Virus record (IMG/VR): IMGVR_UViG_3300050821_013430
Coordinates: 1 to 64,000 of that record
Strand: one strand, 5' to 3'
DNA: 64,000 nucleotides
Shown here one piece after another: positions 6,686 through 51,650 of the stretch (positions are counted from its first letter, which is position 1; every line of letters starts with the position of its first letter). The position numbers were made by a program, and so were the translations under genes. Under the pieces are notes generated by a model, which saw nothing but the letters and a program-made list of their open reading frames with translations, did not search any database and was not told the origin of the DNA.

Positions 6686-7058
6686 ATCTTACTGGCCTTA
6701 CTTCGGTGAGGGTATGCGATTTGAGTTTTTCGCCGATGATCTTTTTATCTTGCTGATCGAGTTCTTTTCTCAGATCAGCAAGTTTCTTTAGACGCAGACC
6801 ATCGCGACTAGGTTCTAAATAAGTTTCGTCAAAACTCTCTGCTAATTCTTCTTTTTCTTCTTCCAATTCTTCAATGGTAGGAGCAGTGGTAATTTTGATT
6901 AGCATTACATCTTCTAATGTCTTAGTGATAATCATCTTACCACTTCCATCTTCGAGAAGAAGAACGCTTTCTTTTTCTGACCAACTCTCTACAATACCAT
7001 CTACTTGAATAGAATTTCTAAGAACTACTTTGACCCTATCATCTTTTTTGATTAGCAT
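6648..7058 (-). CDS. Hypothetical protein with N-terminal Sm/Hfq-like barrel and C-terminal coiled coil
   Basis: RVKVVLRNSIQVDGIVESWSEKESVLL resembles the Hfq Sm1 strand pattern. Confidence 0.5.
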   Translation of the reverse strand: MLIKKDDRVKVVLRNSIQVDGIVESWSEKESVLLLEDGSGKMIITKTLEDVMLIKITTAPTIEELEEEKEELAESFDETYLEPSRDGLRLKKLADLRKELDQQDKKIIGEKLKSHTLTEVRPVRYESHFFKKPGTK

Positions 7059-9135: not shown

Positions 9136-9140
9136 TGATA

Positions 9141-10698: not shown

Positions 10699-10932
10699 TT
10701 ATCCTTGTTTAGTTTCATTTAGTTCATAATGATCAATTTGCGATACTCTAATGGCGACCATTATTCCAGCACACCAATCAGCTTTCATCAAAATGGCAGG
10801 TGAGAAGCCACTATCTTCTGCCATACCTAACTCACCTATAACGGCTTCAACATCGCCAATTAGGCAGCTACCATCAAATGTATGAACTCTGAGATTCTTA
10901 CCTTCTAATCCATCGAAATCTTGCTTTTGCAT
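10699..10932 (-). CDS. Small Sm/LSm-like beta-barrel protein
   Basis: LEGKNLRVHTFDGSCLIGDVEAV...AILM...VAIRVSQIDHYE. Confidence 0.55.
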   Translation of the reverse strand: MQKQDFDGLEGKNLRVHTFDGSCLIGDVEAVIGELGMAEDSGFSPAILMKADWCAGIMVAIRVSQIDHYELNETKQG

Positions 10933-11809
10933 TTACTTTCTCCTGTCTTGTTATATGTCTTGTTATATGTCTTGTTCTATTTGAACCTTCAATAATATTA
11001 AGTTTAGCCGAATATGGCCGCAAATTTTCGAGGGCCCAACATTTCTTGAAATTTTCCTCTTTCATATTTTTATATGGTAAATCGGATTGAGGAATGATAT
11101 GATCTAATTGCCAAGTCCAAGTCGAGGAGTCATTATCATCCCAAGTTTTAGCATTATATCGACCGTGATTTTCCCAAGTCATCCAAAAGTTTTTGTCTTT
11201 CCATTGGCTTTCGATATGAAAAGCTAGACTATCAGGAGTCCAATCCACAAAATCAAGAAAAGAATAATTATTTTTGGAAGAGCCTATTTTGTTCAGAGCG
11301 GCATTCACCATTCTTGAAATATTTACCCTGATTTTATATACTGGATCGTTCTTTTTCTTTTCTCTTTGCCATTTATTATAAGATTGTGTAATTTTCTCTC
11401 TATTATCTTCCCTGTATTGTTTTTTATATCGTTTTGTTCGTTCTCTAATTTGTGGCTGCGCGCGATACTTCTTATCTTTTGCAAGAATTTCTTCTTTATT
11501 ATTACTATAATATGTGCGTTTTCTTATACTAATATAGTTATTGTTTTCTTTCCTATATTCTTTATTATATTGATCTATCGATTCCTTATTTTCAGCATAA
11601 TATTCTTTTTTCTGTGTAATAATATTTTCACTGTTATGAGCATAATAATTTCTATTCTTGGCCAAAATAGTTAATTTATTTTTCTTATAGAAGGCCTGTT
11701 GATTTAGTGCAAGACATTCTTTACATTGACCGGTTAGCCTCCCGGTATCAGATCGAATTCTAAATTCACTATTTTCTTTGGTCTCTTTACACTGAATACA
11801 TTGTTTCAC
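10898..11809 (-). CDS. Free-standing HNH homing endonuclease (family copy 1)
   Basis: CxxC...CxxC, basic helical Y/K/E repeats, WTWQLDHIIPQS...KCWALENLRPYSAKLN. Confidence 0.85.
   Translation of the reverse strand: MKQCIQCKETKENSEFRIRSDTGRLTGQCKECLALNQQAFYKKNKLTILAKNRNYYAHNSENIITQKKEYYAENKESIDQYNKEYRKENNNYISIRKRTYYSNNKEEILAKDKKYRAQPQIRERTKRYKKQYREDNREKITQSYNKWQREKKKNDPVYKIRVNISRMVNAALNKIGSSKNNYSFLDFVDWTPDSLAFHIESQWKDKNFWMTWENHGRYNAKTWDDNDSSTWTWQLDHIIPQSDLPYKNMKEENFKKCWALENLRPYSAKLNIIEGSNRTRHITRHITRQEKVNAKARFRWIRR
10944..10976. repeat. 12-bp tandem repeat (tgtcttgttata, about 2.75 copies) in the HNH gene tail
   Basis: Visible directly; encodes TRHITRHITR. Confidence 0.8.
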
Positions 11810-15253: not shown

Positions 15254-16018
15254 TCAATCATTTTTCTTTTGATGGCGAGTTCGTCTAATGCCATCTAAAA
15301 TATTTTGTTTTGCGCTCAGTGGGCGAAGATTTTCTAATGCCCAGCATTTCTTAAAATCTTCATCTTCCATTGTTTCGTAGTGAAATTCTGAATGAGGAAT
15401 AATATGATCTATTTGCCAAGTCCAAGTGGAAGGATCATTATCATCCCAGGTTTTAGCATTATATATCCCATGATTTTTAAAATGCATCCAAACGTTCTCA
15501 CCGATCATCTGAGATGCTAAATGATTTAAAAACTCCTGAATTGTATAATCAAGATATTGAATACACGATTCGCCCAATTTAGAGCCACCATTTCTTTTAA
15601 GACCGTAATTAATTGCACTTGACATCAAACATCTAAAAGCGTAAGCAGGATCGTTTTTCTTGCGATCTCTTTCATATTTATTTTTCTGTTCGCGAATAAA
15701 TTCTTTATTTTCCTCTTTATATTTTTTATTATAGATGCTTATAGTTTCTTTATTTTCTTTACGATATTCAGCATATGCTTCTTTATTTTCTTTTTTGTAT
15801 TTTTTCGCGTAAATTTTACGGTCTTCGCTATTTACTTGATAATAATCTTTACCATATTGCCTAATATTTTCTTTATGCTTTTCATAATATTTTTTGTTCT
15901 TGGAATCATGACAATTTTTACAATTGTTTCTATATTTATTTGTATCTTTTCTGAAATAAAATTCATCTAATGATTTATTTAATCCACAAATACAACATTT
16001 TTTAATATTTTCTTGCAT
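15254..16018 (-). CDS. Free-standing HNH homing endonuclease (family copy 2)
   Basis: Start moved to MQENIKKCCICG (ATG 16018) to avoid overlap; WTWQIDHIIPHS...KCWALENLRPLSAKQN. Confidence 0.85.
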   Translation of the reverse strand: MQENIKKCCICGLNKSLDEFYFRKDTNKYRNNCKNCHDSKNKKYYEKHKENIRQYGKDYYQVNSEDRKIYAKKYKKENKEAYAEYRKENKETISIYNKKYKEENKEFIREQKNKYERDRKKNDPAYAFRCLMSSAINYGLKRNGGSKLGESCIQYLDYTIQEFLNHLASQMIGENVWMHFKNHGIYNAKTWDDNDPSTWTWQIDHIIPHSEFHYETMEDEDFKKCWALENLRPLSAKQNILDGIRRTRHQKKND

Positions 16019-16031
16019 TGTATGCCCAAAA

Positions 16032-17153
16032 TTATTCAAACGGAATTTGATCAACAATTTTAGACCAATCATAATGGTCACAGATATTCATTCGTTGTTT
16101 TTCAAGTTCAGCATTCAATAATGAAAAATCTGAATAAGCCTTTCTAAGTTGTTCTATCGCACTTTCCATGTTAGGCATAAACCATTTAGTGCCTCTTTTT
16201 TGTTCCCAATACATACTGGTGGGTTCCGCCTCCACTTCATCACCTTCAATAAGTAATGAGTTATCGGTAGTAAGGAAATCTTTTTGACCGCCATAGTTGG
16301 GACATATATTAACTTTACCGGAAGCGAGACCCTCTAATCCCGGAATATAAAAACACTCTGTATGACTCATAGTAAATACTGCGTCAATACTTCGATATAG
16401 AACAGATATATCATCTATATAATTAGTTATTAACTTTACTTCGGCGTGTTTGGGAAACTGTTTATAAAACGAATTTAAATATTCATTTAAATCTATATCG
16501 AATGTTTGAACGGCTCTTTTAGGTCGTGCCTTTAAAAGTAAACAAACATCATCATCTATTGTAAATGCTTTTCCATAAGCAGTTAATAGTCCAGAAATAT
16601 TTTTTCTCTTATGATTTTGTGCGATATTAGATAGTATTTTAAATTTTTTTTTGGTGGGGAGACTGATAGTCGTGGCTTGTCCAAACTGAGCGCCATTAAT
16701 CCCATGTGAGAGTACTTGCATTTTATTTTTAGGAACACCAGAATTAGCAAATGTTTCCATAGATGATTCAGATGGTGGTAATAATGTATCGCAATATACG
16801 TGCTGTTGAGCAAATCCTGTTGGTAAAGCATTCACTCCGGCCCACTCGTATGACCAAATACCAAAACGATTTTTTTTACTGTGCGAAAGATATCGAGAAA
16901 AATTTTTCATGCAGGTATAACTAATACACGCGTCATAATTAGGGCCCGGCTGATTTCCATACATTTTCCCACTTGGATTACCATCACTATATCCAATTAA
17001 ATATGGCATTAAATCTCGTGGTAAATGATCTATGCCATCGGTAGAGTATAACTTTACATCATGTTGTTTTTTAAGTAGGGCGCGGGCCATTTCTCTACCG
17101 ATCACTCCCCAACTATGATTGGCTCCTAAAAATTGTCTAATTAATATTTTCAT
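16032..17153 (-). CDS. GT-B glycosyltransferase (GT4-like)
   Basis: HKRKNI, SHTECFYIPGLEGLASG (Ex7E), NYGGQKDF, YDW at the C-terminus. Confidence 0.82.
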   Translation of the reverse strand: MKILIRQFLGANHSWGVIGREMARALLKKQHDVKLYSTDGIDHLPRDLMPYLIGYSDGNPSGKMYGNQPGPNYDACISYTCMKNFSRYLSHSKKNRFGIWSYEWAGVNALPTGFAQQHVYCDTLLPPSESSMETFANSGVPKNKMQVLSHGINGAQFGQATTISLPTKKKFKILSNIAQNHKRKNISGLLTAYGKAFTIDDDVCLLLKARPKRAVQTFDIDLNEYLNSFYKQFPKHAEVKLITNYIDDISVLYRSIDAVFTMSHTECFYIPGLEGLASGKVNICPNYGGQKDFLTTDNSLLIEGDEVEAEPTSMYWEQKRGTKWFMPNMESAIEQLRKAYSDFSLLNAELEKQRMNICDHYDWSKIVDQIPFE

Positions 17154-26500: not shown

Positions 26501-27833
26501 TATAGGTGGCCAAGGGTGGGGTAGGGCCTGTCCCATCATTAGTAAAATCTGCACCATAGACGTAAACAGTGCCGGTAGCATAATCTACTGAATATTCTCC
26601 TGGTCGGGCGGGTAATGCTGCCAAATTGAACGTAACCTCATAAAGAAAGGCTGGATGAGGGATAGATGGATTTGGCGCATTCGGATTAGTAAGAATTAAT
26701 CCACCCAATGTTTCTACATTACTATTACTATCTACAACGGGAGCGTGTTGTAAATTAAAAATATTTTCGATTGGAGGCATAGCCTCACGAGCCGATGTCA
26801 ATACATTTGTTATTACTACATTGTCTGAATTGATGACTCTCCCCAAATCTTTATATTGATAAGAAACAATAATCTGAAAAATATTGTTGAGTGAAAAGGC
26901 AGAATCATTTAGAATACTTTGACTCAAACCAAATTGATTGTCCTGAAGTAAAAGATAGGTAAATCCAAATTCTTGGTCATACAAAGAATTTAGTAATTGA
27001 TATCCGTGGATATCAATAGGATAGGTATATGGCAATCGACCATCAGTATAGGTAAAGATAACGCTTTCTAAAATAATAACTGGGCTATTGGAAACGGTAA
27101 GTACAAAGTTGTCTATATTGAAAGTGTCTGTAGTATTACTAGATGAAAGAGAAAGAATGTCAGTGGCAGATGCTGCTAACAGCGAGACTGGATTGTCTGG
27201 AAAACTAGTAAAAGAAACTGAAATGGTTGAATTAGCGCCAGTCGGATTGATTCCGACCCGATCAATTTCGTAGGCCCCCTCTTCTACCAAACGATCGAAA
27301 GGGCCTGGGCCTCTAATTTTTCTTTCATCCACCACGGTGAAAGAAAGATAATTTTCATTTTTGCTCTGTCGAATGTCGTAAAGGGCTCTAGCCATATTGA
27401 CAGCATACGATTGGAGCAATTTATAGACAAATGAACTACTATCATGGATACCATCATAAACTTGATCTCGTAAATAATTGATTAGAAAATTCAGGACAGG
27501 ATTATCGGAATCTGCTGGGCCCAATATCAATATGACATTTGTTACTCCGTCTTCTACAAGAAGAGCGTCGCCATTTAAAGATCGAAAAAAAGAACTCGGA
27601 GTGGATGCGAAAGTAATAAAATAAGCGGCTTGCGTAGTCAGCGGCTGAGTGGTAATAGTTAGAGTATTGCCGGATACTGATGTGATCAATACTTGTGGAT
27701 TAGGAACAATATCTAAATTTGAAACGATCGATACATTAGTAGTGTTGATCGTAGGAGCAATGTTCTCCGTAAAAGTAGCAGTAATAGTTGTACTATCTAT
27801 TACGCTAACAGATAAAACTCGAAGAGCGCCCAT
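20502..27833 (-). CDS. Very large baseplate wedge/tail protein with LamG (concanavalin A-like) domains
   Basis: 2443 aa; QGSFQTWV / QGTIEFWV, HHVAASW / WHRVKATY, LFIDG, IDNFRISD; directly after baseplate J. Confidence 0.7.
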   Translation of the reverse strand: MGALRVLSVSVIDSTTITATFTENIAPTINTTNVSIVSNLDIVPNPQVLITSVSGNTLTITTQPLTTQAAYFITFASTPSSFFRSLNGDALLVEDGVTNVILILGPADSDNPVLNFLINYLRDQVYDGIHDSSSFVYKLLQSYAVNMARALYDIRQSKNENYLSFTVVDERKIRGPGPFDRLVEEGAYEIDRVGINPTGANSTISVSFTSFPDNPVSLLAASATDILSLSSSNTTDTFNIDNFVLTVSNSPVIILESVIFTYTDGRLPYTYPIDIHGYQLLNSLYDQEFGFTYLLLQDNQFGLSQSILNDSAFSLNNIFQIIVSYQYKDLGRVINSDNVVITNVLTSAREAMPPIENIFNLQHAPVVDSNSNVETLGGLILTNPNAPNPSIPHPAFLYEVTFNLAALPARPGEYSVDYATGTVYVYGADFTNDGTGPTPPLATYNYLFTYQNNLDYAYDPTPNDVAPIPTGNLLNNSATITFNYEQVLIPGTDYRAEVHLESLSESIENRLVALNALMTLNGPVTDVFRIFNQTSGEVYNLLRWNENTVYFTYNTPPNITQLTGERVSFQDVLNELLFVNQTLTNTGGLSIFKIFLSNNSLTNATADGIGFSLNSTVNFSNSNIFQNEIWFDENETETLNVARLSKIGLYQIDYLNGVVYVAVSIGQSLSIGTISYKNSNIVPQNPHLISVDDIYYRISLLNPKNKHFTFVDFGDGFILPTSLDPSDETLLNGNIGAPYEIFNQQIGVFTTGAVFVPGVSNAINFIRGIFEFDDLKNSTTPFNFVSGATFSGQTITLAPVNLQQYTTVEFDGTNHYVQTNLNLPYLSPNVTLTVNVVRLSDSANLWSIPGTIVLGNGVRLILSGANAPQTGDAVAVNYTLSINALSRAIVDYNKGDLFIDYTYLADEIEISYEYGDNVIDFRQSETVSTNDVYYVTYKVGALRNALINNFGSLINVPALTSVDINLPRERYRDALSAALSSFLQGPTVTAMTNLVEQISHVKPQITESIFQNWSLGSSLLNPRAIETTGILQLLPAKFGNGVLVDTLGQTITFPASSNLRIEQGSFQTWVSPHWNGLDNDADLTVTITKDGLPIPSDQIFLGAAENHPQYNISNSFTTNKRQEVQGLPNLNKDGVYLYYAPDASGLFNRWYLEVVDGYSDGYSDGYSTIYNIKITTDGKFYDVRSVVSPQPVDLQITSGISTATFVFRGPVPLDVAATFLADFDHYLLDFGIDKNKNRLSLYKDPSGYFNFRVYDNGGRAYSVSADVSKWRINDLHHVAASWILNSKNGRDELHLFIDGFEVPNIIKYGSRIGPYPHELFRTVDPEEIAGVITNGVVSSTDLVTTAGSASVSSSINFDQYGVVAPATIFINEPGFAPGGYTVLTVLGQTLILNTAMPSSITNGKFSVNPTSFIVQTEIDIFPNFAISTISATLNGSDLNTISGSATVSSASINFTAHGIVPGYLLRIDGNPTLQSHYNILAVSGNTLTLDSAVSLTLNNAVFHVYPNTPVEIPGLRAVNPSYTLTKDANFNNILTITNNAHTNDLIHIITLGINHRRIRQPYYQWGGDTTIDVGSNGQTLPQATIHVVSTAGFPTSGSLYVFTNKGFQLVSYTGLTSNIFTGCTGGTGTMSTGGTVSGGSTVIATHLPIPVALAGVNVFHEILPITIINSSNSTLILNNFTSNALTTDQPSTSINGRTLSVTINSTNNINFSTPVSVTINGNPSSETITFTSLGTQNSVNKYAGINSIIVSGMANNTSKAFMTLFVEEEFSITVPENSNADYPTIKYSYQIDAGTTLIGSGTNVVTDPNSFFSSPDINNYLVISTPLAVAGTYQITGVSADHHSLTLATPLAAFSSGFYQILNASDFRSGFQSGFFFFEQALTPGQPYPLARGRYDFDYYTYLSVKLDPINKDAFLGTDFNSNNVFDGLIDALKSSSIKLTDTRVGETIPSSQESITKDFNSLKPLKDDINTVMLTTFDTFPFTNDARYYVISQNTGFVQAGFSVNSNFNQSVYITDKPLVIDNAGILNTKQQGTIEFWVNPIFDTGNDPNYRYYFDASGITIENVVSINDTAVQVVGDVGRVLSVKLQHGDQSIDYFDGGSVGFDTSGAISENTTSLNTNTVIVSQSILQVISVKIIGDPSGTNYFNKGAIGTDGHTIFLDVTLPQASLPVVVIYKPTSAANKALNRQVIRLKKRLPSQNMPVIVSYIPSGLQGDRISIYKDPFGYVNFSVMASGIEYKLRGQTFWSQGTWHRVKATYSFNSGTTNDEIRLFIDGYERGNLTLGSGLLFGDPHIAGATTLGIGGIAAEINFKDTFNELYLGSQFNGQNPAFALIDNFRISDIARPLFIPFGESIDVNYNSNLNVVFPVTQDLYTTLLLDFNTLVTLNQDFAVLLKNGSFDFTIDVFDSFDILLENPQAQNVLEALVEILKPANSSAFITYTR

Positions 27834-30800
27834 TAGATTGAAACCTGATTGATAATAATATTATTTGCAACAAAGTATTGATCATTATGGGCTTGCAAAC
27901 TCAATACCTGACCAGGAGAACCATCCAAATTGAATGTTTCAATTCGTGCAGCATTTACTCCGGCTACTGAAAATGCCTTATTAATCAAATTAGAGGCATC
28001 CAAAGTAGTTCCAAGAGAAGTGGCATTAATAGAAGAAATTAGTGTAGATTTAACATTTTGTAATACTAAGTTTGGAACAACATTTGGTTGATTTGACACA
28101 ACAATATCCATGGTGAGATCAATCAAAAGTTCTTTGGCCTCTCTAACTAAAACATCGGCATTGATTGGTCTGCTAGTTTCAATATTGAATGTAGTGGCCG
28201 AAATCAATTGATTATAGTTATACGAAATAGTAATTCTCTCATTGGTTTTTGGAGCAGTATAATCGTAATTAATAGTATACCTTGAACCAGTAATTGGCTG
28301 ATTGAAATTAGCTAATGTGATCTTGGCTGACTGAGAGGAGGTAAATCCGCTAGAAATATAAAACTTGTCGATAAGAGCAAATTGTTTATTGGTATAAAGT
28401 GTTCCATTACGAGTAAAAGTTAGGCTTTCAGTATCTCCAAAAGTAGAATAATAGAAGGTAATGCGAAGACGGTCTCCGATCTTTATTTCATTAGTGCCAA
28501 TATTGTTGATAGTATTTGGCAGAATAAAATCAATCGGACCTAGATTTGGTTTTCTAACAAATTCGGAATCAAAAAAGGTAGTGTCTTGCAAAGCAGATAA
28601 TGCCGTGTCATAAATTACTTCCGTTGTCAATACTTCACTACTAGTAATGGTTGGTGTAGTAACCTTTTCTAATTTTGCTATTTTGATTAGTTTGACATTT
28701 AATGGCACTGTGCTTGCATTTCCCAAATTCAATACTTGTGAAAACGCTCCCAAAGTTGTTTGCTGTAATCCAGTAGCGGTGGCGGTAAAAACAATGTCGG
28801 TTGCTTTAGTAATAGTAGTGCCAATAAAAGAAAGAACGCCCGAATTATTTACTTGATCATTAACATTAACTGCTACGCGGGTGGGCGTACTTCTCAAATT
28901 GGATGGAACATAGTAGAACACAATTACTTCATCCAAATGAGACGCATTGGTAGTTACAGGGAAACTCAATTTATTATTGACTGTATCAATGGTTCCCGCA
29001 TCTGACCATAATTCTTTTCCATCAAGAATCCTAATAACACTAACTTGTCTAGAGCTAATTTCTGCAAAATAATTTCCAATAACAAGTTCATCAGTTTGAG
29101 AATTGAAAGACAAGATATCATAAGTGTTTATATTATTGGGAAAGATCGAGGAAGAAATAGTAATTTTTTTAGAAGTGATATCTAATAGCTGCCCACTGCT
29201 ATTAAAAATATTACCAAACTGAACAGTAGGACTACCGAACAGAGCGGTTGAGGGTGGAGAATTTGGAATAATATAACCATCTACTCCTGAAGCGATAACA
29301 ATATCTGTGTGGGGCTCAAAAATGGTAAAACTGACGTAACCATCTGCCACGAAATCATGAATATCTACCGAAAAATTAATGAGATCAGATTGTAGAGAGC
29401 CCAAATCTCTTTCGATTATTCTATCAGAAAAAGTAAAAGGTTGAAAGCGATTAGTATCATCTGCAAAATAACAAATAAGTACTCGATCTCCGGCACTAGG
29501 AGTATTATAGCCAGTAAAAATCAATTGATAATTAGTAGTTGTGTTGTTGATGGCAATACTACCAGCATTACCAGAATTCCATAATTCAGCGTTATCAGAT
29601 AAACGAATTACTGAAATTACTTGTGACGCTAAAAGCGAAGTATTGGTGCTGGATAAATTGAGTTCTACATACAATTGGTTACTAAGGTTCTTCTGGACAG
29701 GTTGAAAATCCCGTCGCATGGTGTTATCTAAATTTGTATTATTAAAACCAATAGCACTATTAAGTAAATAACCATTAGCCACACGACTAGATGGAAGAGA
29801 TGTGATGCCGGGAGCGAAGAAATTCTGTACATTGGCAATATAAGTAACACTAAGTAGAAGATTGTTAGCGGTGGTGGTGATATTGGATACTGGAATAGTA
29901 ATTTGATTATTTGCTATACTACCAACAGAATTTGTAATATTGAAAGTATCTATTGTATTCCAAAGAATAGTCGCCTTGTCACCTGGTTGGGCCTGCGTAT
30001 CAGTTGGAAGAATTATGGTAGAAGTAAATTCAATTTCGATACCCACTACAATAGTAGAATTGATGAATGTTCCATTATTTTGGGCAGTACTATAAACTTC
30101 GGTTGTAGTATTTTTTAGATAAACATGATCCACGGTATTAGGAGCTACTATCAAATTGGTGACAACTATTGATTGACGTCCAGCATAAATACCAGAAACT
30201 ACTGTTACTACAATTCCATCAATTTCATTGTAAAGGCTGGCAGTAATGACCGAGGAAATTGGATGTTTGGCTACCCCAGTAAATAAAGTGTTACTTCCAT
30301 TACGAGTAAAATTGATTTTTTCTTCTCTTACTAAATTAGAAAAACTCCAATCAGCACTATCAGTAACTACCCGGGGGTTATTGGTATATAATCTGCCATC
30401 ATAATCGGCATATTGATCGTAAGTAATTACCCAATTATAATCTACTTGCAAAATATCATTGAAAGCGGGAAAAGTATTGCCAGAAATCTGAATAACACCA
30501 GAAGTGTTTATGGTACCCGTTCCATTGAAATTTTGGCTAGTAACTGTATAACGTTCTCCGGTAGTAGCATTAAAGACGCGCGTTACGTTGGTTGCGGGAG
30601 TATGCAATAGTTGTATTAGTGATCTATTAGAAGGCAGTACTGTACTATTTTCATTGGTGATAGAAATATTTTGTTGTATTTGCGGTATTTCAATTACGCC
30701 AGGGAAAGTGGTAGCATCCTGCCCGTTGAATTGTCCTTTAATAAGATCTTCTGAAAAATTAATTTGATTACTAATCCAAGCAAAAGTATCAAATCCCCAA

Positions 30801-31939
30801 GGACTTCCGCCATAAAGACCAGTGTCTTTAATTAACTTATAGTTGCCCGATACTCGTCCAAACTCATCGGTACTCATAGTGGTAAAATTAGAACCACTAA
30901 GAGAGCCGGTCACTTGTAAGATAGCATCCACAGGCTGGGCTGGCAGCGTACCTGCCGCGATATCAGCTACGCGCTTCTGAGTGATAGTTTTATTGGTATC
31001 TCCTGGAATTTGACCCAACACAACATTATTAGCAGCATTAGTTGGATCATTTCTATTGCTCTTATCCTGATAGATATAACTATCAGAATGTTGAACCAAA
31101 TTGGTTCCTAAAATTACCACATCTACTTTCCCACCAGTACCATCTGAAACAATAGTTTGATTTCCTTGATTATCAGTAGTTACCACACTTCCGTCTCTAG
31201 TCATAAGGGGGTCGCCAGGGCCCACAACATAAGCATCCTCTACTCCGGTAGTGGCAAGAGCGGTGTTTTTATAACCAAGTGCGGTACCTACACTGGAACC
31301 ACTGAAAACAGACAAAATTCTATTTCGGAATGTGGCATCATCTTCTTGATCAGTGCCACCTAAAAAGGCTGTCACGTTAGTAACGTTGGACACACCAACA
31401 ATACTAGTTCGATTAATTGAATACTGACCAATATTACCAATAGTCCCACTGGTAGTTGCTTGTACAGAAACTTCAACGGCATATTGATCTGTAATTCCAA
31501 CAAAAGCAAAATTGGCTGAATATTTAGTTGCAATAGAGCGATAAAAATTAGTTTGCGCAGGGTTGACTGCAATACCAGTTAGAACAGCAAAAGATACCCC
31601 ATTGTTAGCAATTACTACATCTCCCTTATTAACATTCGTTACACCAACAATAGAACTAAAAGTTAATATAGCGATTCCGGCAGATGGTGTTGCAGTTTTT
31701 CGAGAAAGACCAAAATTACGAGCTAGTTTGTCTAAATCACTACCAACCACAAGGCGAAGAGATTGTTGAGTGGAAACTTTAGAGAGTTCATCGTAAAGTA
31801 GAGCGATTTGATTGGCAGGGGCATCGATAGCAAGATCACGAGCGACAGCGCCAGGTTTTGTGTCGAGATTGGGCTGGTTTAACCGAAAATAGTCGATTAG
31901 ACTAAGAATGATCTCGTTAGAAGATCGTATAGTCACCAT
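27833..31939 (-). CDS. Baseplate J / gp6-like wedge protein with large insertions
   Basis: DLDKLARNFGLSRK...A...GTIGN...GGTDQEDDATFRNRI...GGKVDVVI. Confidence 0.85.
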   Translation of the reverse strand: MVTIRSSNEIILSLIDYFRLNQPNLDTKPGAVARDLAIDAPANQIALLYDELSKVSTQQSLRLVVGSDLDKLARNFGLSRKTATPSAGIAILTFSSIVGVTNVNKGDVVIANNGVSFAVLTGIAVNPAQTNFYRSIATKYSANFAFVGITDQYAVEVSVQATTSGTIGNIGQYSINRTSIVGVSNVTNVTAFLGGTDQEDDATFRNRILSVFSGSSVGTALGYKNTALATTGVEDAYVVGPGDPLMTRDGSVVTTDNQGNQTIVSDGTGGKVDVVILGTNLVQHSDSYIYQDKSNRNDPTNAANNVVLGQIPGDTNKTITQKRVADIAAGTLPAQPVDAILQVTGSLSGSNFTTMSTDEFGRVSGNYKLIKDTGLYGGSPWGFDTFAWISNQINFSEDLIKGQFNGQDATTFPGVIEIPQIQQNISITNENSTVLPSNRSLIQLLHTPATNVTRVFNATTGERYTVTSQNFNGTGTINTSGVIQISGNTFPAFNDILQVDYNWVITYDQYADYDGRLYTNNPRVVTDSADWSFSNLVREEKINFTRNGSNTLFTGVAKHPISSVITASLYNEIDGIVVTVVSGIYAGRQSIVVTNLIVAPNTVDHVYLKNTTTEVYSTAQNNGTFINSTIVVGIEIEFTSTIILPTDTQAQPGDKATILWNTIDTFNITNSVGSIANNQITIPVSNITTTANNLLLSVTYIANVQNFFAPGITSLPSSRVANGYLLNSAIGFNNTNLDNTMRRDFQPVQKNLSNQLYVELNLSSTNTSLLASQVISVIRLSDNAELWNSGNAGSIAINNTTTNYQLIFTGYNTPSAGDRVLICYFADDTNRFQPFTFSDRIIERDLGSLQSDLINFSVDIHDFVADGYVSFTIFEPHTDIVIASGVDGYIIPNSPPSTALFGSPTVQFGNIFNSSGQLLDITSKKITISSSIFPNNINTYDILSFNSQTDELVIGNYFAEISSRQVSVIRILDGKELWSDAGTIDTVNNKLSFPVTTNASHLDEVIVFYYVPSNLRSTPTRVAVNVNDQVNNSGVLSFIGTTITKATDIVFTATATGLQQTTLGAFSQVLNLGNASTVPLNVKLIKIAKLEKVTTPTITSSEVLTTEVIYDTALSALQDTTFFDSEFVRKPNLGPIDFILPNTINNIGTNEIKIGDRLRITFYYSTFGDTESLTFTRNGTLYTNKQFALIDKFYISSGFTSSQSAKITLANFNQPITGSRYTINYDYTAPKTNERITISYNYNQLISATTFNIETSRPINADVLVREAKELLIDLTMDIVVSNQPNVVPNLVLQNVKSTLISSINATSLGTTLDASNLINKAFSVAGVNAARIETFNLDGSPGQVLSLQAHNDQYFVANNIIINQVSI

Positions 31940-31940
31940 A

Positions 31941-32066
31941 TTATACCGCCTTCTTTATTTTATGTCGGATTCGATAAACACCATCTCTTGTATTTTGTTT
32001 GGCGCTTAGAGGGCGCCCGCTATATTTTTCTTTTTTTAACTTACAGTTTTTACAAATAATCAACAT
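31941..32066 (-). pseudogene. Internally deleted, in-frame miniature of the HNH endonuclease family (41 aa)
   Basis: MLIICKNCKLKKEKYSG|RPLSAKQNTRDGVYRIRHKIKKAV* matches both ends of the 44054..44746 protein. Confidence 0.85.
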
Positions 32067-32092
32067 ATCGCTACTATCCCTTATTCCAATAA

Positions 32093-32100
32093 TATATCCG
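32093..32100 (-). promoter_or_regulatory. SSGATATA motif (CGGATATA)
   Basis: Recurrent intergenic motif. Confidence 0.55.
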
Positions 32101-32104
32101 ACAT

Positions 32105-32536
32105 TTATAGACTATTGAACCCAAATTGAATTGTTATGGGTTTTAGGCCCTTACTCGTTACTTTGATACTAACCTGTAATAGGCGAGGATCACTGGTATT
32201 TCTTACTACATCGATGCTTAAAATTGAGCTTATTTGTTCATCGGGCGTTAGCTTCTGAAAACTTTTGAGCTGCTTGATCTGCAAAGTCCGTAAATTTTCA
32301 ATAGCGTTTTGTAATTGAGTTTGTGCTACTTGTAAAATAATACTGGTAGATAAGGGGGATCCAATTAAAGAACGAGAGATAAAAGAGCCGTACCAAGGCT
32401 GTAATGGATTTCCACCTACAGGCGTCAGGCAAATTTTTAGAATATCCTGAACTAACTTGTTGCTATCTTGTACAATAGCTAGTTCTCCATTTTGGATGAC
32501 CAGATCTCCATTAAATAGTTGTAAATCAAACGACAT
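32105..32536 (-). CDS. gp25-like baseplate wedge protein
   Basis: LVQDILKICLTPVGGNPLQPWYGS; immediately upstream of baseplate J. Confidence 0.8.
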   Translation of the reverse strand: MSFDLQLFNGDLVIQNGELAIVQDSNKLVQDILKICLTPVGGNPLQPWYGSFISRSLIGSPLSTSIILQVAQTQLQNAIENLRTLQIKQLKSFQKLTPDEQISSILSIDVVRNTSDPRLLQVSIKVTSKGLKPITIQFGFNSL

Positions 32537-42200: not shown

Positions 42201-44054
42201 GGCCAATCTACCACTTTTGTGCTTGATGATATTTTCTTCCAAAATGGCTTGATTTTCTGGAAGAAGCGGGGGAGCGTTGCCCTTGAAGTTATCGGAGACT
42301 GTATCGAATTTAGTCTGAAACGGGGTTAGCGGATCAAATAGGGGGCCATTGAAAGTATCTACGGCTGGTTTGAGATTGACTACACCCATCTCTAAATAGC
42401 CCATATTATCAGTGCCTTGTACCTCCAATACATATTTGCCATTAGACCAATTACTTTGAGATTGACTTACTAATCCACCAAAAACATGTATCCCTTCTTT
42501 TTCTGTAACGAAAAGATTTCGTAATAGTGTCCATAATTGATCAGGACAATCAACGCCAACATATATAGATTTTTCAATCTGTGTATTCAGATCCCCGGAT
42601 GGATTGAAAAGTGTATTGAATTGGTTTTTCAGATCAAAAACGGTGTTATTGAGATTTTGTAAATAGCCAAGGCCAGTTAGCATATTTTGCAGCCCGCCTA
42701 TTACCTTATTATCTAATCTAGATTTGGAGTTCATGTAAACATTGACTTGATCCAAGGGTTGGGCGATGAATTTGCCACCGTAATGAAACCTCAACATTTT
42801 TCGAGCATGTCGAGTAATATTGGAAAACTGATTGAAATTAGCCTGAGAACTATTCATCAAAGTCATCTGATCAAAGATAGACTTGATTGCGGCAGTAAAA
42901 AGAGTCAGTTCAGAAGGGCTCAGTCCTTGATCTTCTACGGCAGGGGCACCCTGCAAACTATCAGGGCTAACATTGACTCCGTTGCTAGAAGAAAATGGAT
43001 CAGAGAACGGATTGAAAGTGAAATTGAGCTCTACTCCTAAGGCATCAATAATGGCGCGCACTTTTTTACCAAGTAAGGTATTAGGACTAATAGAAAATTC
43101 AATAGCACTAGCACCACGTGCTACTCGTGCTTGATTTAGTTGATTGATGTTATCGGCTACTACATTGTTGATATCGTTTTGTCCTTGTACAAAGGCCGGA
43201 CTGGTAAAGAAAATATTGTTGGCATCACTTAGAGCCTGCTCAATGTCATAGTTAGTGATACGGGTAATTTTATATGGGTCTTCAATTGAAAAATTGAAAG
43301 TACCACCGGAGCCACCCATAGAATCGATATGAATACTAGTACTTATATTAGTGATATTGGTCAATTCAATAACACCAGTGCCATATGCCATATCAGTCCT
43401 AAATAATGGATTGACATCAGTTAGCCAGGTGGTGTAAGGGGTATCATGAGAAAAGGCTTGCACCGTACGAATTTTGTCAATGACTCCACTAAGTTGGGAA
43501 AAGGCTTGTAGAAAACCACCCGGATCGTCAGACTGTGGACTAAAATTACTAGTCAGATCACTGAAAGAATCGGCAGCATCATCCACTAAATTGATGATCA
43601 ACGGCATTAGATGGTAGTCTAATCTTCCGGTGGTAGTACTAACTCGTTCGATTTTAGCCAATTTTTCTAGAGCTGCGATTTGACGACATTTATTGAGGAA
43701 GAGAAATTTGGATGCGCGATAATAGAGTTTCTCATCCTGATCCATATACTCGCTGCGAAAATTTTCCGCCAGTGTGGAAAACGCACGTTTTTTAAGTAAA
43801 ACAGTCATATCTGGTTCTTGCCATAACATCTCATATGGCTCAGGATCAACATTGAATTGATCAAATCTGATATAGCCTTGTTCTAGGTATCTTCGTTCCG
43901 CTGACTGATCAATTTTACTGGCAAAATCACCAAGAGCGCCTAGTTTTTTGACCTGACCATTCTCGACAATATCGAGGGTATTCATTTGATTTTCACCAAT
44001 TCCAAATTGTTCTTGGATTTGATTGGAAAGACCGGTCAAAAAATCGTTAGACAT
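39246..44054 (-). CDS. Baseplate hub protein (gp27/gpD-like) with large insertions
   Basis: LEVFCDTQGHIRIRP and GRVAIAGNEYMQPGEVVYI...FYVHSVSHQF..GGTFTTTLELSYG. Confidence 0.72.
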   Translation of the reverse strand: MSNDFLTGLSNQIQEQFGIGENQMNTLDIVENGQVKKLGALGDFASKIDQSAERRYLEQGYIRFDQFNVDPEPYEMLWQEPDMTVLLKKRAFSTLAENFRSEYMDQDEKLYYRASKFLFLNKCRQIAALEKLAKIERVSTTTGRLDYHLMPLIINLVDDAADSFSDLTSNFSPQSDDPGGFLQAFSQLSGVIDKIRTVQAFSHDTPYTTWLTDVNPLFRTDMAYGTGVIELTNITNISTSIHIDSMGGSGGTFNFSIEDPYKITRITNYDIEQALSDANNIFFTSPAFVQGQNDINNVVADNINQLNQARVARGASAIEFSISPNTLLGKKVRAIIDALGVELNFTFNPFSDPFSSSNGVNVSPDSLQGAPAVEDQGLSPSELTLFTAAIKSIFDQMTLMNSSQANFNQFSNITRHARKMLRFHYGGKFIAQPLDQVNVYMNSKSRLDNKVIGGLQNMLTGLGYLQNLNNTVFDLKNQFNTLFNPSGDLNTQIEKSIYVGVDCPDQLWTLLRNLFVTEKEGIHVFGGLVSQSQSNWSNGKYVLEVQGTDNMGYLEMGVVNLKPAVDTFNGPLFDPLTPFQTKFDTVSDNFKGNAPPLLPENQAILEENIIKHKSGRLAGQLASTDNLVQAVEIDSRGGTRNIMYLPDGLVYKWKQGIGIFVQFGDSFNANDPNTVRTPAITSEPFAGQDIMNVLSLLITGLPYNYATYFKAVAELDNIQRDPQNNRDSSFSFYLGITSNLQKNNLLWGDFIPFKKLVVPEQTFQAMAQQSIFIGQINSQVDSLLQQIQDTQNLMAKAGPDESQNLQNQIQTLQTQLGNISGNITGSLGSSAIPLTVVGNDVSYDSGEFLNNSTSNADITQPGNRALLRKKVNFLTRRMSWAVRSNQDKNLLIVDDSYDKDYDIIAFGKSLSDNLSLFKSEFTTVKQQIGTVAQLLNLEVFCDTQGHIRIRPEQYNRMPSSVFYRMIQLRQQSGIQLFPQFIEDLFVDQITSLRNQVEIVENQIRLDGALIGYNDDISVQSALNTNNAIGLGANGNFTFISDPVVGDTGGSISDFSQFDKETNPDLKFSSIDQTFTANLSNQLSTNTNLFNSAVRAQLAVSLIEAPSLTISIDRINSLKKIISSKTGQPVTLDNFLQQDAQGNLTLLTSAKSQVDIIKVTNDMATQVSNRQKALKNLSVAIKNAQEAIALNDPNDKTVANKLLLPDLYGNSNIPEIFENMIEDESYDDLGPGSGSRYVIHNYQIISMNILEQKPEFTYIEVQGLLDPYINNGLLPSDLNAFAEGGNALVTGAAIDYDLWRIYGVQNRHAIPVPFLSNPQSQCAPYAASLLSRARRNIFHGRVAIAGNEYMQPGEVVYIEDLDILFYVHSVSHQFNFGGTFTTTLELSYGHNPGEYIPTPTDIIGKLLYNNRDQSNYVTYRHQSNFNESNIGAFAINPDSSGFSSIDDQLFSGSNATLNNTVFSNVQYVASYAVGSLNLPGSNVSPTVELRIFYNGGAVDETLQSAANSLQQKLTGTGFSPTNPTLGGSTTKSLPSNAVSVVAVNLGNANNFRSPSQKAWDLARNQANLTSSSTDAINTDVSDSLYRYIIDCTVYFSNTNPIPQ

Positions 44055-44746
44055 TAGGTAGCCTTCTTTCGATGACGTGTTCGTCTAACACCATCCAGTA
44101 AATTTTGTTTGGCACTCAGTGGTCGAAGATTTTCGAGTGCCCAACATTTCTTGAAATTTTCATCTTCCATAGAAGTATAAGGAAGATCGGATTGTGGAGT
44201 AATATGATCGATCTGCCAAGTCCAAGTAGCGGGATCGTTGTCGTCCCACGTTTTGACATTGTATGGGCCACGATTTCCCCAATTCATCCAAGCATTATGG
44301 CCAACCCATTGACTCTCAATATGAGCCATAACTTCTGATATAGGATTAGGAAGGTAAGTTTTGACCGATTTCCCTTTTTTGGAAGAACCGGCCCTTTTGA
44401 GATCAGCAGATACGCGCCTAGAAATATCCTGCCTCATAGCAAAAGAAGGATCCTTAGACCTTCTTTTCTTTTCTGTTTCTCTCCGTGAAACCCTAATGGT
44501 CTCTATATTCTGATTGTAGTATGCTTTCTTAGCCTCTTTGGTACGTTCATAATAGTTTTTCGCGGAGGCCTTGATGCGTTCTTTATTTGTTTCACGATAC
44601 GTTTTGAAGTATTCATGTCTAACTTCGCTAATAGATTCTTTATGTTCGTTTCGATATTCTATAAGATATGAGAGCCTGCACTCACGACACTGGCATCCGT
44701 GGTATTTCTCTTTCTCCAATCCGCAATCTTTACAAATGATCAACAT
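44054..44746 (-). CDS. Free-standing HNH homing endonuclease (family copy 3)
   Basis: CKDC...CREC; WTWQIDHITPQS...KCWALENLRPLSAKQN. Confidence 0.85.
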   Translation of the reverse strand: MLIICKDCGLEKEKYHGCQCRECRLSYLIEYRNEHKESISEVRHEYFKTYRETNKERIKASAKNYYERTKEAKKAYYNQNIETIRVSRRETEKKRRSKDPSFAMRQDISRRVSADLKRAGSSKKGKSVKTYLPNPISEVMAHIESQWVGHNAWMNWGNRGPYNVKTWDDNDPATWTWQIDHITPQSDLPYTSMEDENFKKCWALENLRPLSAKQNLLDGVRRTRHRKKAT

Positions 44747-44754
44747 GCTTTACC

Positions 44755-44762
44755 TATATCCC
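44755..44762 (-). promoter_or_regulatory. SSGATATA motif (GGGATATA), 8 nt before ATG
   Basis: Recurrent intergenic motif. Confidence 0.5.
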
Positions 44763-44801
44763 GTTCGCCCTAAATTTACGCCAGATCATATTCATTGATT
44801 T

Positions 44802-48925: not shown

Positions 48926-49963
48926 TTAGAGGCTTGCTTCAATTGTCTGGGGAATAGTGTGCCTGACTTGCCTAGCACCTTCCGAGATGTTTTGTTTGGC
49001 ATTTAGAGGCCGCAAGTTTTCTAATGCCCAGCATTTCTGAAACGCTTCATCCGCCATTGAGGCATAAATAAACTCACTATGAGGAACAATATGGTCTATG
49101 TGCCACTTCCAGGTGGCAGAATCGTTATCATCCCAAGTGTTTTTCCTATAATGCCCCCAATTATCCCAGGTCATCCACGGCTCGAACTGTTTTTCGAGAT
49201 GATCTTTGAGTTCGTGCATCGTATAGGGTAAGTAATCATTGATAGAATGGTTTCTGACGCTCGTTGCATCTCTAAGTCCCCTATGAATGGCTTTAGAAAC
49301 AACTTTCCTGAGTTTGCGAATGCGTTTGAGATTTTCTTCATCAACGTGGGGGATTATATTGTGTTTGACGCAGTAATCTTGAACATTGGATTTGTGTATG
49401 CCAATAAGCCTGCCAATCTGTGCAGAGTTCCAGCCCCGCCATTTTAGATCACGTATTTGTTGCCCAATTTCTTCGGTAATTTTGCCGGAACAATTGGAAT
49501 TTGAGCTTTTGAGGCCGTGTTGCTTGCAAAAATTCCTGATAGTCGCTTCACCCAAGCCAGTAATTTCAGCGATTTTTGCTCGCCCATATCCTTGGGCCAC
49601 TAGGTCAATGATTTGATGTTTTAGTTCCAAAGCGAGGCGCGTTTCTATTAGCCTACCATCAACGAAAATCCCTTTTCGCTTACAAAAACGAGCAACTGAG
49701 GATTCAGCAAGATCAAACAATATGGCTATTTCGGCCGTGCCCGTTTTTTGAGCATATAGACTAATTATTTTGTCGCCCATTTCTGGAGTGATTTTGACGT
49801 TTCTCTTGATCCCATATTTGGCGAATATCTTACTGACCGATTTGATATTGATGAGAATAGCATCAGCTATCTTGTCTATTGATAGACCCTGCGAGCGTAA
49901 GGCTAAAACCTTGTCTTCAATTTCTTTGGTTAGAGTGGTTCTACGGCGCTTTTGTTGTTCCAT
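48926..49963 (-). CDS. Free-standing HNH homing endonuclease with four HTH repeats (family copy 4)
   Basis: Repeated I..L...G.....IA...G HTH units; WKWHIDHIVPHS...KCWALENLRPLNAKQN. Confidence 0.85.
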   Translation of the reverse strand: MEQQKRRRTTLTKEIEDKVLALRSQGLSIDKIADAILINIKSVSKIFAKYGIKRNVKITPEMGDKIISLYAQKTGTAEIAILFDLAESSVARFCKRKGIFVDGRLIETRLALELKHQIIDLVAQGYGRAKIAEITGLGEATIRNFCKQHGLKSSNSNCSGKITEEIGQQIRDLKWRGWNSAQIGRLIGIHKSNVQDYCVKHNIIPHVDEENLKRIRKLRKVVSKAIHRGLRDATSVRNHSINDYLPYTMHELKDHLEKQFEPWMTWDNWGHYRKNTWDDNDSATWKWHIDHIVPHSEFIYASMADEAFQKCWALENLRPLNAKQNISEGARQVRHTIPQTIEASL

Positions 49964-50720: not shown

Positions 50721-51650
50721 TTACTTATTTCTTGGCTTTCGTTTCTTGCTTTGATGTCGGATTAGTTTGACACCATCTGAATGATTTTGCTTGGAATTGA
50801 GCGGCCTAAGATTTTCCAGGGCCCAGCACTTTCGGAAATTTTCGTCCTCCATTGAAGCATAGGGCAGATCAGTTTGTGGAATGATATGATCGATTTGCCA
50901 AGTCCAAGTGGTTTGATCTGCGTCTTTCCAAGTTTTTCGATGGTAGGCTCCATAAGTGTTCCACGTCATCCAAGACTCAAACTGACCTTCTAAATGGACT
51001 TTTAGTTCTTCTATAGTATAGCCGAGAAAATCGAGACAACTTCGACCTTCTTTCGTGACATTGAAGCCTTTCAGCATTTTCCAGATACTGTATGAAATGC
51101 TTTTACGAAGGACAAAACAAGGATCGGTTTGGCGAAGTTCTTTGGCTCGTTTGTTCCCTTTCTCTTTGTTGAGAAGGTATTCACAGTCTTTACAAACCGT
51201 TTCAAAGGAGACCCGATCACCTTTTACCCTCTTCCTAAAATCAGAGATTGGCTTGGTGATCTGGCAGATTTTGCAGCAGTGCTCGGTTTTGAGGTGGGCG
51301 ATGCGAGGCGGGGTTCTACTACGGGTATCGATTCCAAACTCATCGCGAATGGCATTGACACAATGTCGTGTAATCACAAGCTCTTTGGCAATCTTGCGCG
51401 AGCCCATTCCCTGATCAAACATTTCCTTTACTCGCTGTTTGATATTATAGGACACAACGTTCTCGACTCCTGCTCGATACCACTTTCCGTCACCATATCG
51501 AGGAACAGCCTCATTATCCGATAAAACAAGAACGACGGTTCTTTCACTCATATTGAAGCGTTTGGCTAGATTTTCAACCTCAGTCCCCGCTGTGTAGAGC
51601 ATAATGATTTCCGCTTCTATTTCGGGAGTACGCTTCGTTTTGGCAGTCAT
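50721..51650 (-). CDS. Free-standing HNH homing endonuclease with two HTHs and a Zn finger (family copy 5)
   Basis: HTH units, CCKIC...CKDC, WTWQIDHIIPQT...KCWALENLRPLNSKQN. Confidence 0.85.
   Translation of the reverse strand: MTAKTKRTPEIEAEIIMLYTAGTEVENLAKRFNMSERTVVLVLSDNEAVPRYGDGKWYRAGVENVVSYNIKQRVKEMFDQGMGSRKIAKELVITRHCVNAIRDEFGIDTRSRTPPRIAHLKTEHCCKICQITKPISDFRKRVKGDRVSFETVCKDCEYLLNKEKGNKRAKELRQTDPCFVLRKSISYSIWKMLKGFNVTKEGRSCLDFLGYTIEELKVHLEGQFESWMTWNTYGAYHRKTWKDADQTTWTWQIDHIIPQTDLPYASMEDENFRKCWALENLRPLNSKQNHSDGVKLIRHQSKKRKPRNK

What the first reader, a model, noticed from the sequence alone, without database searches (positions are those of the whole stretch)
31941..32066. In-frame miniature homing endonuclease kept in front of baseplate J
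Seen: the apparent intergenic gap encodes MLIICKNCKLKKEKYSG-RPLSAKQNTRDGVYRIRHKIKKAV*. The first 17 aa match the start of the 44054..44746 nuclease (MLIICKDCGLEKEKYHG) and the last 24 aa match its end (RPLSAKQNLLDGVRRTRHRKKAT). About 190 central codons are missing, the frame is preserved, and the junction lies in a GGGCGCCC palindrome. The upstream CGGATATA motif is kept. The tail supplies an SD-like AAGGCGG and stops 1 nt before the baseplate J ATG. Inference: the nuclease was lost but its ends were retained because the essential downstream gene depends on them for expression.
Basis: partly seen in the sequence, partly recalled or inferred. Interest (0 to 1): 0.65.

Follow-up and report, generated by a model that had tools for sequence, protein, structure and literature searches.

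The report
Decayed homing-nuclease gene before baseplate J
The 41-codon reading frame between two baseplate genes of this soil jumbo phage is the leftover of a selfish nuclease gene that once sat there; related phages show the same site empty, occupied or in other stages of decay, and the leftover's last codons now carry the ribosome-binding signal of the essential baseplate J gene.

Summary
Window 31941..32066 (minus strand) is a 41-codon ORF. Its first 17 and last 24 codons match the two ends of the 230-aa nuclease at 44054..44746; about 190 central codons are missing and the frame is kept. It stops 1 nt before the baseplate J ATG.

Related phages settle what it is. Of 121 distinct relatives, 92 have gp25 and baseplate J no more than 40 nt apart. 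Ten or eleven carry a full-length homologous nuclease gene exactly there. At least four separate lineages carry decayed remnants.

Sister pairs with a full and an empty site show that the insertion replaced baseplate J's own leader. Its Shine-Dalgarno-like signal now lies in the nuclease's last codons, usually with a TAATG stop/start overlap. Every clear remnant keeps that 3' end.

Two remnants (L140, L150) are frameshifted or carry nonsense codons.

The window's remnant still carries the imprint of nuclease-type purifying selection, so the deletion is young and an open frame proves little.

This is a known kind of object, a degenerate free-standing homing endonuclease gene, with a well-documented comparative series. 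The nuclease's HNH identity rests on sub-threshold matches only. No expression data exist.

The parts
31941..32066 (-). 41-codon mini-ORF, an internally deleted nuclease gene (remnant)
   Evidence: the same ORF is called as a gene in other samples' contigs
32016..32066 (-). 5' segment, codons 1-17: start plus the first CxxC of the nuclease's zinc-ribbon-like N-terminus
   Evidence: 13/17 aa and 36/51 nt identical to the start of the 44054..44746 gene; family-conserved C5 and C8 kept
31941..32015 (-). 3' segment, codons 18-41 plus stop: the last part of the nuclease motif (RPLSAKQN..DG..R.RH) and its basic tail
   Evidence: matches the C-termini of all five window paralogs; all family-conserved positions kept
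31946..31952 (-). SD-like AAGGCGG, 6 nt upstream of the baseplate J ATG, inside the last codons of the mini-ORF
   Evidence: the same or similar run ends the full nucleases at this site in L148, L155, L183 and L177
32011..32018 (.). GGGCGCCC palindrome at the deletion junction; part of a small GGCGC-N7-GCGCC hairpin
   Evidence: not over-represented
32085..32092 (-). CGGATATA promoter-like motif of the native gp25-baseplate J spacer
   Evidence: about 7-fold enrichment upstream of genes; present in empty-site relatives
32067..32104 (-). 38-nt leader between the gp25-like stop and the mini-ORF start; also holds a degenerate second motif copy (GGGATAG)
32105..32536 (-). gp25-like baseplate wedge gene (143 aa)
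   Evidence: PHROG 2669 baseplate protein E 2.8e-11, PHROG 120 and 43 baseplate wedge
27833..31939 (-). baseplate J-like gene (1368 aa), the gene served by the remnant's 3' end
   Evidence: Pfam PF04865 E 2.8e-18
44054..44746 (-). closest full-length paralog (230 aa); the only one with the MLIICK start. Its stop overlaps the ATG of the next structural gene (TAATG)
15254..16081 (-). full-length paralog
10898..11809 (-). full-length paralog
48926..49963 (-). full-length paralog with a helix-turn-helix repeat N-terminus
50721..51650 (-). full-length paralog with a helix-turn-helix repeat N-terminus

Best explanation
The mini-ORF is the relic of a free-standing, HNH-like homing endonuclease gene. 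That gene had inserted between the gp25-like and baseplate J genes, a recurrent insertion hotspot in this group of soil jumbo phages.

The insertion displaced baseplate J's own short leader. From then on the SD-like signal of baseplate J, and the stop codon abutting its ATG, lay in the nuclease's last codons. Transcription presumably comes from the native GATATA-type promoter-like motif upstream; this step is inferred.

An internal deletion of about 570 nt later removed the DNA-binding helical region and the catalytic Asp-His core. The interior was dispensable. The 3' end could not be lost without removing baseplate J's initiation region, so it stays.

Today the remnant acts at most as a short translated leader. 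Ribosomes ending at TAA, 1 nt before the ATG, could reinitiate, and the AAGGCGG run could also recruit ribosomes directly.

The open frame and the retained 5' end are most simply explained by the youth of the deletion, possibly helped by weak selection for continuous translation. They are not explained by a strict requirement.

Shown: homology of both ends, occupancy of the same site by full genes in relatives, replacement of the native leader, and retention of the 3' end in all remnants.

Inferred: nuclease activity and homing, promoter function of the motif, and the dependence of baseplate J translation on the remnant's 3' end.
For: - Two-ended, colinear, in-frame homology to the 44054..44746 gene.
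- Site states among 121 distinct relatives: 92 empty sites (spacer no more than 40 nt), 10-11 full nuclease genes at exactly this site, clear remnants in 4 separate places on the baseplate J tree, and full genes scattered, usually sister to an empty allele.
- Nine of 11 full genes end in a TAATG overlap with the baseplate J start, and 10 of 11 have a G-rich purine run 7-12 nt before the ATG.
- Sister pairs show the native leader replaced.
- Remnants L067 (58 aa), L081, L140, L150 and L138 all keep the nuclease 3' end up to the baseplate J start.
- Deletion age: the window's remnant keeps all 14 family-conserved positions, and its 10 differences from the paralog lie at variable ones. pN is 0.18 against pS 0.74. 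So the deletion is young relative to the paralogs' divergence.
- The remnant is fixed and essentially invariant in at least 4 other samples' contigs of the same phage.
- The genome uses tight coupling generally: 49 ATGA overlaps and 21 one-nt overlaps.
Against: - No expression data exist; there is no RNA run.
- No stable RNA structure hides the baseplate J start (z 0.28), so an unfolding type of coupling is not indicated.
- AAGGCGG-like runs also occur in some 'empty' leaders (L090, L014). The last ~15 nt may therefore be native leader read through by the nuclease ORF rather than nuclease-derived. The dependence would then be on native sequence.
- Remnant detection relied on the conserved C-terminus. 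That biases the survey towards seeing 3' ends.
- HNH identity is sub-threshold only, and the fold searches were uninformative.
Confidence: 0.75

Rival explanations
1. Selected leader ORF. Translation of the mini-ORF from its own ATG through to the TAA is required to deliver ribosomes to baseplate J, so both ends and the frame are held by selection.
For: - The ORF is intact in the window, L067 and L081, and in four possible ultra-short versions (L082, L134, L154, L160), each bridging the gp25 stop to the baseplate J start.
- Nine of 19 long spacers hold such a bridging ORF, against 1.96 +/- 1.22 expected from shuffled interiors.
- L081 remains open after further shortening relative to its sister L067.
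Against: - L140 and L150 are broken, yet their baseplate J genes look intact.
- An in-frame deletion is expected one time in three by chance, and the window's deletion is young.
- A near-consensus SD at good spacing allows direct initiation.
- The shuffle null ignores descent from an ORF.
- Same-species contigs are 99.85-100% identical, so there is no polymorphism to test.
Confidence: 0.2
2. Purely neutral decay. The remnant has no role at all, its ends are simply what the last deletion happened to leave, and it will erode to an ordinary short leader.
For: - The young age of the deletion.
- A graded series of sizes in relatives, from 58 aa down to about 17 nt.
- Broken frames in L140 and L150.
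Against: Baseplate J needs some initiation region, and in occupied alleles the native one is gone. At least the last ~15-20 nt therefore cannot be neutral. All remnants retain exactly that part, and the stop/start abutment is conserved.
Confidence: 0.2
3. A functional micro-protein. For example, a 41-aa basic, half-zinc-knuckle peptide that binds DNA, or that interferes with the cognate nuclease of co-infecting phages.
For: Conserved residues of both ends are kept, and the peptide is very basic.
Against: - Only one CxxC of the zinc ribbon remains.
- No family or homolog of this length turned up.
- Remnants in other lineages have different breakpoints and compositions, and two are broken.
- The conservation is explained by recent descent.
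Confidence: 0.04
4. A non-autonomous miniature mobile element (MITE-like), moved in trans by the full-length paralog.
For: Both ends of the parent gene are kept, as in miniature derivatives of transposons.
Against: - There is only one such copy in 472.7 kb.
- Homing endonuclease genes move by break repair and do not recognise their own ends.
- The remnants in relatives sit at the same site, with lineage-specific breakpoints.
Confidence: 0.01

Closest known systems
Free-standing homing endonuclease genes of T4-like phages (seg and mob genes; e.g. mobE between nrdA and nrdB)
   Same: - An intergenic nuclease gene wedged between essential genes.
- Sporadic presence among relatives and several paralogs per genome.
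- The start or stop overlaps the neighbour's stop or start: T4 mobE/nrdA has UAAUGA (PMC2988022), and here there are ATGA and TAATG junctions.
   Different: - The family here has no Pfam model at gathering score and only weak HNH-type matches.
- The coupling emphasised here runs from the nuclease gene to the downstream host gene.
- Nuclease activity and homing are untested.
The homing endonuclease life cycle: invasion, fixation, degeneration, loss (Goddard and Burt model, as cited in PMC2988022)
   Same: One site shows empty, occupied and degenerate states scattered over the host phylogeny. The window's ORF is a degeneration stage.
   Different: Loss appears not to run to a clean empty site. 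The 3' end stays because the native leader of the downstream gene was replaced. The classic cycle was described for intron- or intein-borne genes, where splicing shields the host gene.
HEGs clustered at essential structural genes in ICP1-like and other phages (Barth et al. 2023, PMC10055350)
   Same: Nuclease genes lie next to baseplate and tail genes. Different nuclease subfamilies are interchangeable at one site.
   Different: That work stresses gene fragments and HEG islands. It does not describe two-ended nuclease remnants serving as a leader.
Translationally coupled leader ORFs and termination-reinitiation (review PMC12548453)
   Same: A stop codon within 1 nt of the next start, and an SD inside the upstream ORF.
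   Different: Coupling is not demonstrated here, and the broken remnants L140 and L150 argue that it is dispensable.

Membership tests
HNH / His-Me finger nuclease (the parent gene family) | Significant match to an HNH-type profile | tested here: inconclusive
   No Pfam, NCBIfam or PADLOC hit at threshold. Sub-threshold hits among 71 homologs: HNH_4 in 27 (best E 0.0011), HNH_5 in 9, His_Me_b4a2 in 5, HNH in 4. GmrSD_C at E 0.0019 in one paralog. Atlas neighbours are auto-named 'endonuclease VII' and 'Nuclease family protein'.
HNH / His-Me finger nuclease (the parent gene family) | Conserved Asp-His ... Asn ... Asn/His motif | tested here: met
   D180, H181, N206 and N215 are invariant across 71 homologs and across the window paralogs. 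The mini-ORF keeps only the last Asn and lacks the Asp-His, so it cannot be an active nuclease.
HNH / His-Me finger nuclease (the parent gene family) | Beta-beta-alpha-metal fold | tested here: inconclusive
   In the AlphaFold2 models the nuclease core has pLDDT 53-76 in the full protein and a mean of 67 as a separate domain. Foldseek and VIA-align gave no meaningful match. PDB profile searches were blank.
Homing endonuclease gene (mobile, site-specific) | Presence/absence polymorphism at one precise site among related genomes | tested here: met
   10-11 occupied, 92 empty, the rest decayed or unclear. Occupied alleles are scattered on the tree and are sister to empty ones.
Homing endonuclease gene (mobile, site-specific) | Cleavage of the empty allele and copying by break repair | not testable with these tools
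   Needs enzyme assays or co-infection crosses.
Degenerate HEG remnant (the mini-ORF itself) | Significant colinear homology to a full gene, with loss of catalytic parts | tested here: met
Degenerate HEG remnant (the mini-ORF itself) | A full-length gene at the orthologous site in relatives | tested here: met
   L036, L042, L076, L084, L148, L155, L163, L167, L176, L177, L183.
Translationally coupled leader ORF | Stop codon within a few nt of the downstream start, with the SD inside the upstream ORF | tested here: met
   TAA, one nt, then ATG; AAGGCGG lies 6 nt upstream.
Translationally coupled leader ORF | Downstream translation depends on upstream translation | not testable with these tools
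   No RNA or ribosome data. The comparative evidence is mixed: ORFs are intact in some lineages and broken in L140 and L150.

The most novel reading that the evidence does not exclude
Insertion of this nuclease gene works as a ratchet. By replacing the initiation region of an essential structural gene, it makes the phage permanently dependent on the selfish element's 3' end. The element can then never be cleanly lost. It erodes from the middle outward into a short leader ORF chained by overlapping stop/start codons to both neighbours (gp25, then mini-ORF, then baseplate J). The many 13-25-codon ORFs at this site in relatives, and even some 'empty' leaders carrying AAGGCGG, would then be such scars.
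Probability: 0.3. Interest if true: 0.55.

Novelty: new member of a known kind. Interest (0 to 1): 0.4.

Why it matters
This one site gives a clean natural series of the homing-endonuclease life cycle in uncultured soil jumbo phages: empty, occupied by several nuclease subfamilies, and at least four independent decays.

It also shows a concrete cost of invasion. The host gene's own translation signals are overwritten, so the element's tail becomes part of an essential gene's expression apparatus.

For annotation, it warns that small ORFs between structural genes may be relics of this kind. It also flags a large nuclease family (over 1,400 homologs) that has no curated model.

Tried and rejected
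- **Structure route to confirm HNH.** Two AlphaFold2 models were made. Foldseek against the PDB was run twice and VIA-align wide twice. The helical N-terminus dominated the matches or the core confidence was too low, so nothing was usable.
- **PDB profile searches.** Blank.
- **RNA evidence.** Only soil or seawater DNA-type runs hold the stretch and none is on record as RNA.
- **RNA structure masking the baseplate J start.** None beyond chance (z 0.28).
- **Rfam, sigma-70 and terminator scans.** Nothing relevant.
- **Special role for the GGGCGCCC palindrome.** Rejected, as it is not over-represented.
- **Polymorphism-based selection test.** Same-species contigs are 99.85-100% identical, with one synonymous SNP in the ORF and one SNP 5 nt upstream of its start.
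- **A second site, upstream of the 1602-aa gene, to generalise.** The pattern search found only the same phage.
- **MITE-like reading.** Rejected, since there is a single copy.
- **L082, L134, L154, L160 as sure remnants.** Too short to prove, so they are listed only as possible.

Full report
**The object.** The window is the first 64 kb of a 472,749-bp virus record (45% G+C). It is a jumbo phage, and the public runs that hold it are soil metagenomes.

On the minus strand, three features follow one another:
- A 143-aa gp25-like baseplate wedge gene at 32105..32536 (PHROG baseplate families).
- After 38 nt, a 41-codon ORF at 31941..32066.
- After its TAA and one further nucleotide, the ATG of a 1368-aa Baseplate_J protein at 27833..31939 (Pfam PF04865, E 2.8e-18).

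**The two-ended match is real.**
- Residues 1-17 of the ORF match residues 1-17 of the 230-aa protein at 44054..44746 (13/17).
- Residues 18-41 match that protein's residues 208-230 (17/24, with a one-codon indel).
- A genome-wide tblastn with the 230-aa protein finds nine full paralogs plus exactly these two short pieces. The pieces are adjacent, colinear and in one frame.
- About 190 codons are missing. They include the helical DNA-binding part and the invariant Asp-His of the nuclease motif.

All are present: the GGGCGCCC palindrome at 32011..32018, CGGATATA at 32085..32092 and AAGGCGG at 31946..31952. The palindrome is not over-represented in the genome.

**The parent family.**
- It is large, with 1,443 homologs at E no higher than 0.001, many of them on contigs of 200-500 kb.
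- It has no curated model at threshold.
- It carries an invariant D-H ... N ... N pattern.
- It draws many sub-threshold HNH-type Pfam hits: HNH_4 in 27 of 71 members, best E 0.0011. Its Atlas neighbours are named endonuclease VII or nuclease.
- Structure prediction of the core was too uncertain to confirm a His-Me fold.

I therefore call it HNH-like, not proven HNH.

**The orthologous site in relatives.** Relatives were collected with the gp25-like protein and with a profile of the baseplate J N-terminus, from viral and metagenome contigs. Each gp25-baseplate J spacer was then measured. Among 121 distinct loci:
- 92 have the two genes no more than 40 nt apart.
- 10 carry a full-length homologous nuclease gene of 205-273 aa exactly between the two genes. 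An eleventh, L176, was found but is not in the tree.
- 5 carry clear remnants.
- 4 carry very short ORFs that may be remnants.
- 10 have longer spacers with no detectable similarity.

On baseplate J trees the occupied alleles are scattered, usually next to an empty allele. Clear remnants occur in four separate places:
- the window's phage, sister to the empty L033;
- L140;
- L150;
- the clade L067 + L081 + L138, next to the occupied L076.

This is the pattern expected of a homing endonuclease gene cycling through invasion, decay and loss.

**How the nuclease gene is wired into its neighbours.**
- Nine of eleven full genes end with their stop codon overlapping the baseplate J ATG (TAATG).
- Ten of eleven have a G-rich purine run 7-12 nt before that ATG, inside their last five codons.
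- Several start on or within a few nt of the gp25 stop (ATGA or TAATG). T4 mobE does the same with nrdA (PMC2988022).
- In the close pair L042 (occupied) and L048 (empty), the flanks are 82-86% identical. The empty allele's 15-nt leader with its AAGGA is absent from the occupied allele, whose only SD-like run (AGGAG) lies in the nuclease's tail.
- In L036/L044 the GATATAT motif stays upstream but the native SD is likewise replaced.

So after invasion the initiation region of baseplate J is supplied by the element's 3' end. The 230-aa paralog at 44054 is wired the same way to the next structural gene.

**What the remnants keep.**

| Locus | Length | State |
|---|---|---|
| L067 | 58 codons | N-terminal 10 residues joined in frame to the last 48. 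The start overlaps the gp25 stop and the stop overlaps the baseplate J start. |
| L081 (sister of L067) | 24 codons | Shares the first 24 nt at 22/24. Still bridges both genes. |
| L138 (same clade) | 53-nt spacer | Only about 17 nt of it resemble the tail. |
| L140 | 100-nt spacer (about 95 nt nuclease-derived) | Only the 3' part. Has a TGG>TAG nonsense codon and no start codon. |
| L150 | 178-nt spacer | Has both ends like the window, but the junction is out of frame and a Gln codon has become TAG. |

All of them keep the SD-like run and the stop/start abutment at baseplate J.

The retention of the 3' end is therefore general. The open frame and the 5' end are frequent but not obligatory. 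Bridging ORFs are more common in long spacers than shuffled sequence predicts: 9 of 19 against 1.96 +/- 1.22. That null ignores descent from an ORF, and an in-frame deletion has a prior of one third.

**Age of the window's deletion.** The mini-ORF and the 44054 copy were compared over 40 aligned codons:
- They are 70% identical in DNA.
- Synonymous sites are saturated (pS 0.74), while pN is 0.18.

All 14 positions conserved at 0.8 or more in the family are intact in the mini-ORF. Its ten differences lie at variable positions, with a hypergeometric probability of about 0.006.

The sequence thus still bears nuclease-type purifying selection. Two things follow:
- The mini-ORF does not derive recently from the 44054 copy.
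- The deletion is young relative to the paralogs' divergence.

An intact frame is then expected even without selection. Contigs of the same phage from other samples are 99.85-100% identical. They show one synonymous change in the ORF and one change 5 nt upstream of its start, so they give no power to test selection.

**The upstream motif.** (C/G)GATATA(T/G) is among the most enriched words upstream of genes in this genome, about 7-fold. It also sits in the gp25-baseplate J spacer of empty-site relatives such as L014, L016 and L044. It is thus a native, promoter-like element of baseplate J and not part of the nuclease cassette. In the window it precedes the mini-ORF, which would then be the first ORF of the transcript. 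This is an inference; no RNA data exist.

**A caveat.** AAGGCGG-type runs end nucleases of different subfamilies at this site. They also occur in two short leaders, L090 and L014. Tails of the 'KKA.' type are rare in the family at large, 4 of 85. There are two possible readings:
- The last ~15 nt are native leader that the nuclease ORFs read through.
- Those short leaders are themselves final scars.

I could not decide between these. In both cases the SD lies inside the mini-ORF's last codons.

**Verdict.**
- The identification as a nuclease-gene relic is strongly supported.
- The dependence of baseplate J on the relic's 3' end is supported by comparison, though untested.
- The claim that the 5' end and the frame are kept by selection is not supported as a rule.

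The object is a new member of a known kind, a degenerate free-standing homing endonuclease gene. Its comparative context is unusually informative.

Noticed in passing
window 10898..11809, 15254..16081, 44054..44746, 48926..49963, 50721..51650; genome 64358..65278, 146282..147112, 221975..222889, 224441..225436: There are nine paralogs of one nuclease family with a shared C-terminal domain and swapped N-termini. Most have a CxxC zinc ribbon plus lysine/glutamate-rich helical repeats; two have helix-turn-helix repeats (NCBIfam HTH_Cbp1 and transposase-type HTH hits). The family has more than 1,400 homologs and no curated model at threshold.
   Followed up: partly
genome-wide; e.g. window 32085..32092, 44762..44768, 36915 region: (C/G)GATATA(T/G) is among the top enriched 7-mers within 70 nt upstream of genes (about 7-fold). 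It often lies only 15-18 nt before the ATG, which would imply very short leaders. It is conserved in the same spacer in related phages and is a candidate phage promoter.
   Followed up: partly
window 44054..44060: The 230-aa paralog ends with a Lys-Lys-Ala-Thr tail and a TAATG overlap onto the 1602-aa structural gene. That tail type is rare in the family but typical of nucleases at the gp25/baseplate J site. This hints that the copy moved from that site and took the tail with it.
   Followed up: partly
L010 3244..3987 and L014 3334..3996: A second nuclease gene of the same family lies immediately upstream of the gp25-like gene in two relatives, so the baseplate module has more than one insertion hotspot.
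   Followed up: no
L002 2013..2022 (window about 31380): In one sample's contig of the same phage, baseplate J is split into 188-aa and 1180-aa ORFs by a one-base indel. This is either a population variant or an assembly error.
   Followed up: no
L107 2014..2500: A 487-nt spacer between gp25 and baseplate J has no nuclease similarity. It holds a short tandem run encoding alternating Asp-Lys. The origin of this insert is unknown.
   Followed up: no
L150 (upstream part of its 178-nt spacer): A long AT-rich inverted repeat lies between the gp25 stop and the remnant's start. Its function is unknown.
   Followed up: no
window 32001..32017: A small GC hairpin (GGCGC, 7 nt, GCGCC) is formed exactly across the deletion junction. 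It could be chance, or a trace of how the deletion arose.
   Followed up: partly
whole genome: Gene packing is very tight: 49 same-strand neighbour pairs overlap by 4 nt (ATGA) and 21 by 1 nt. Coupled translation therefore seems to be the norm in this phage.
   Followed up: partly
L004 (LR745208.1, 485 kb uncultured phage) 5305..9805: In a distant relative (gp25-like protein 34% identical), the gp25-like ORF and the baseplate J-like ORF lie 4 nt apart. This fits adjacency being the ancestral state.
   Followed up: partly
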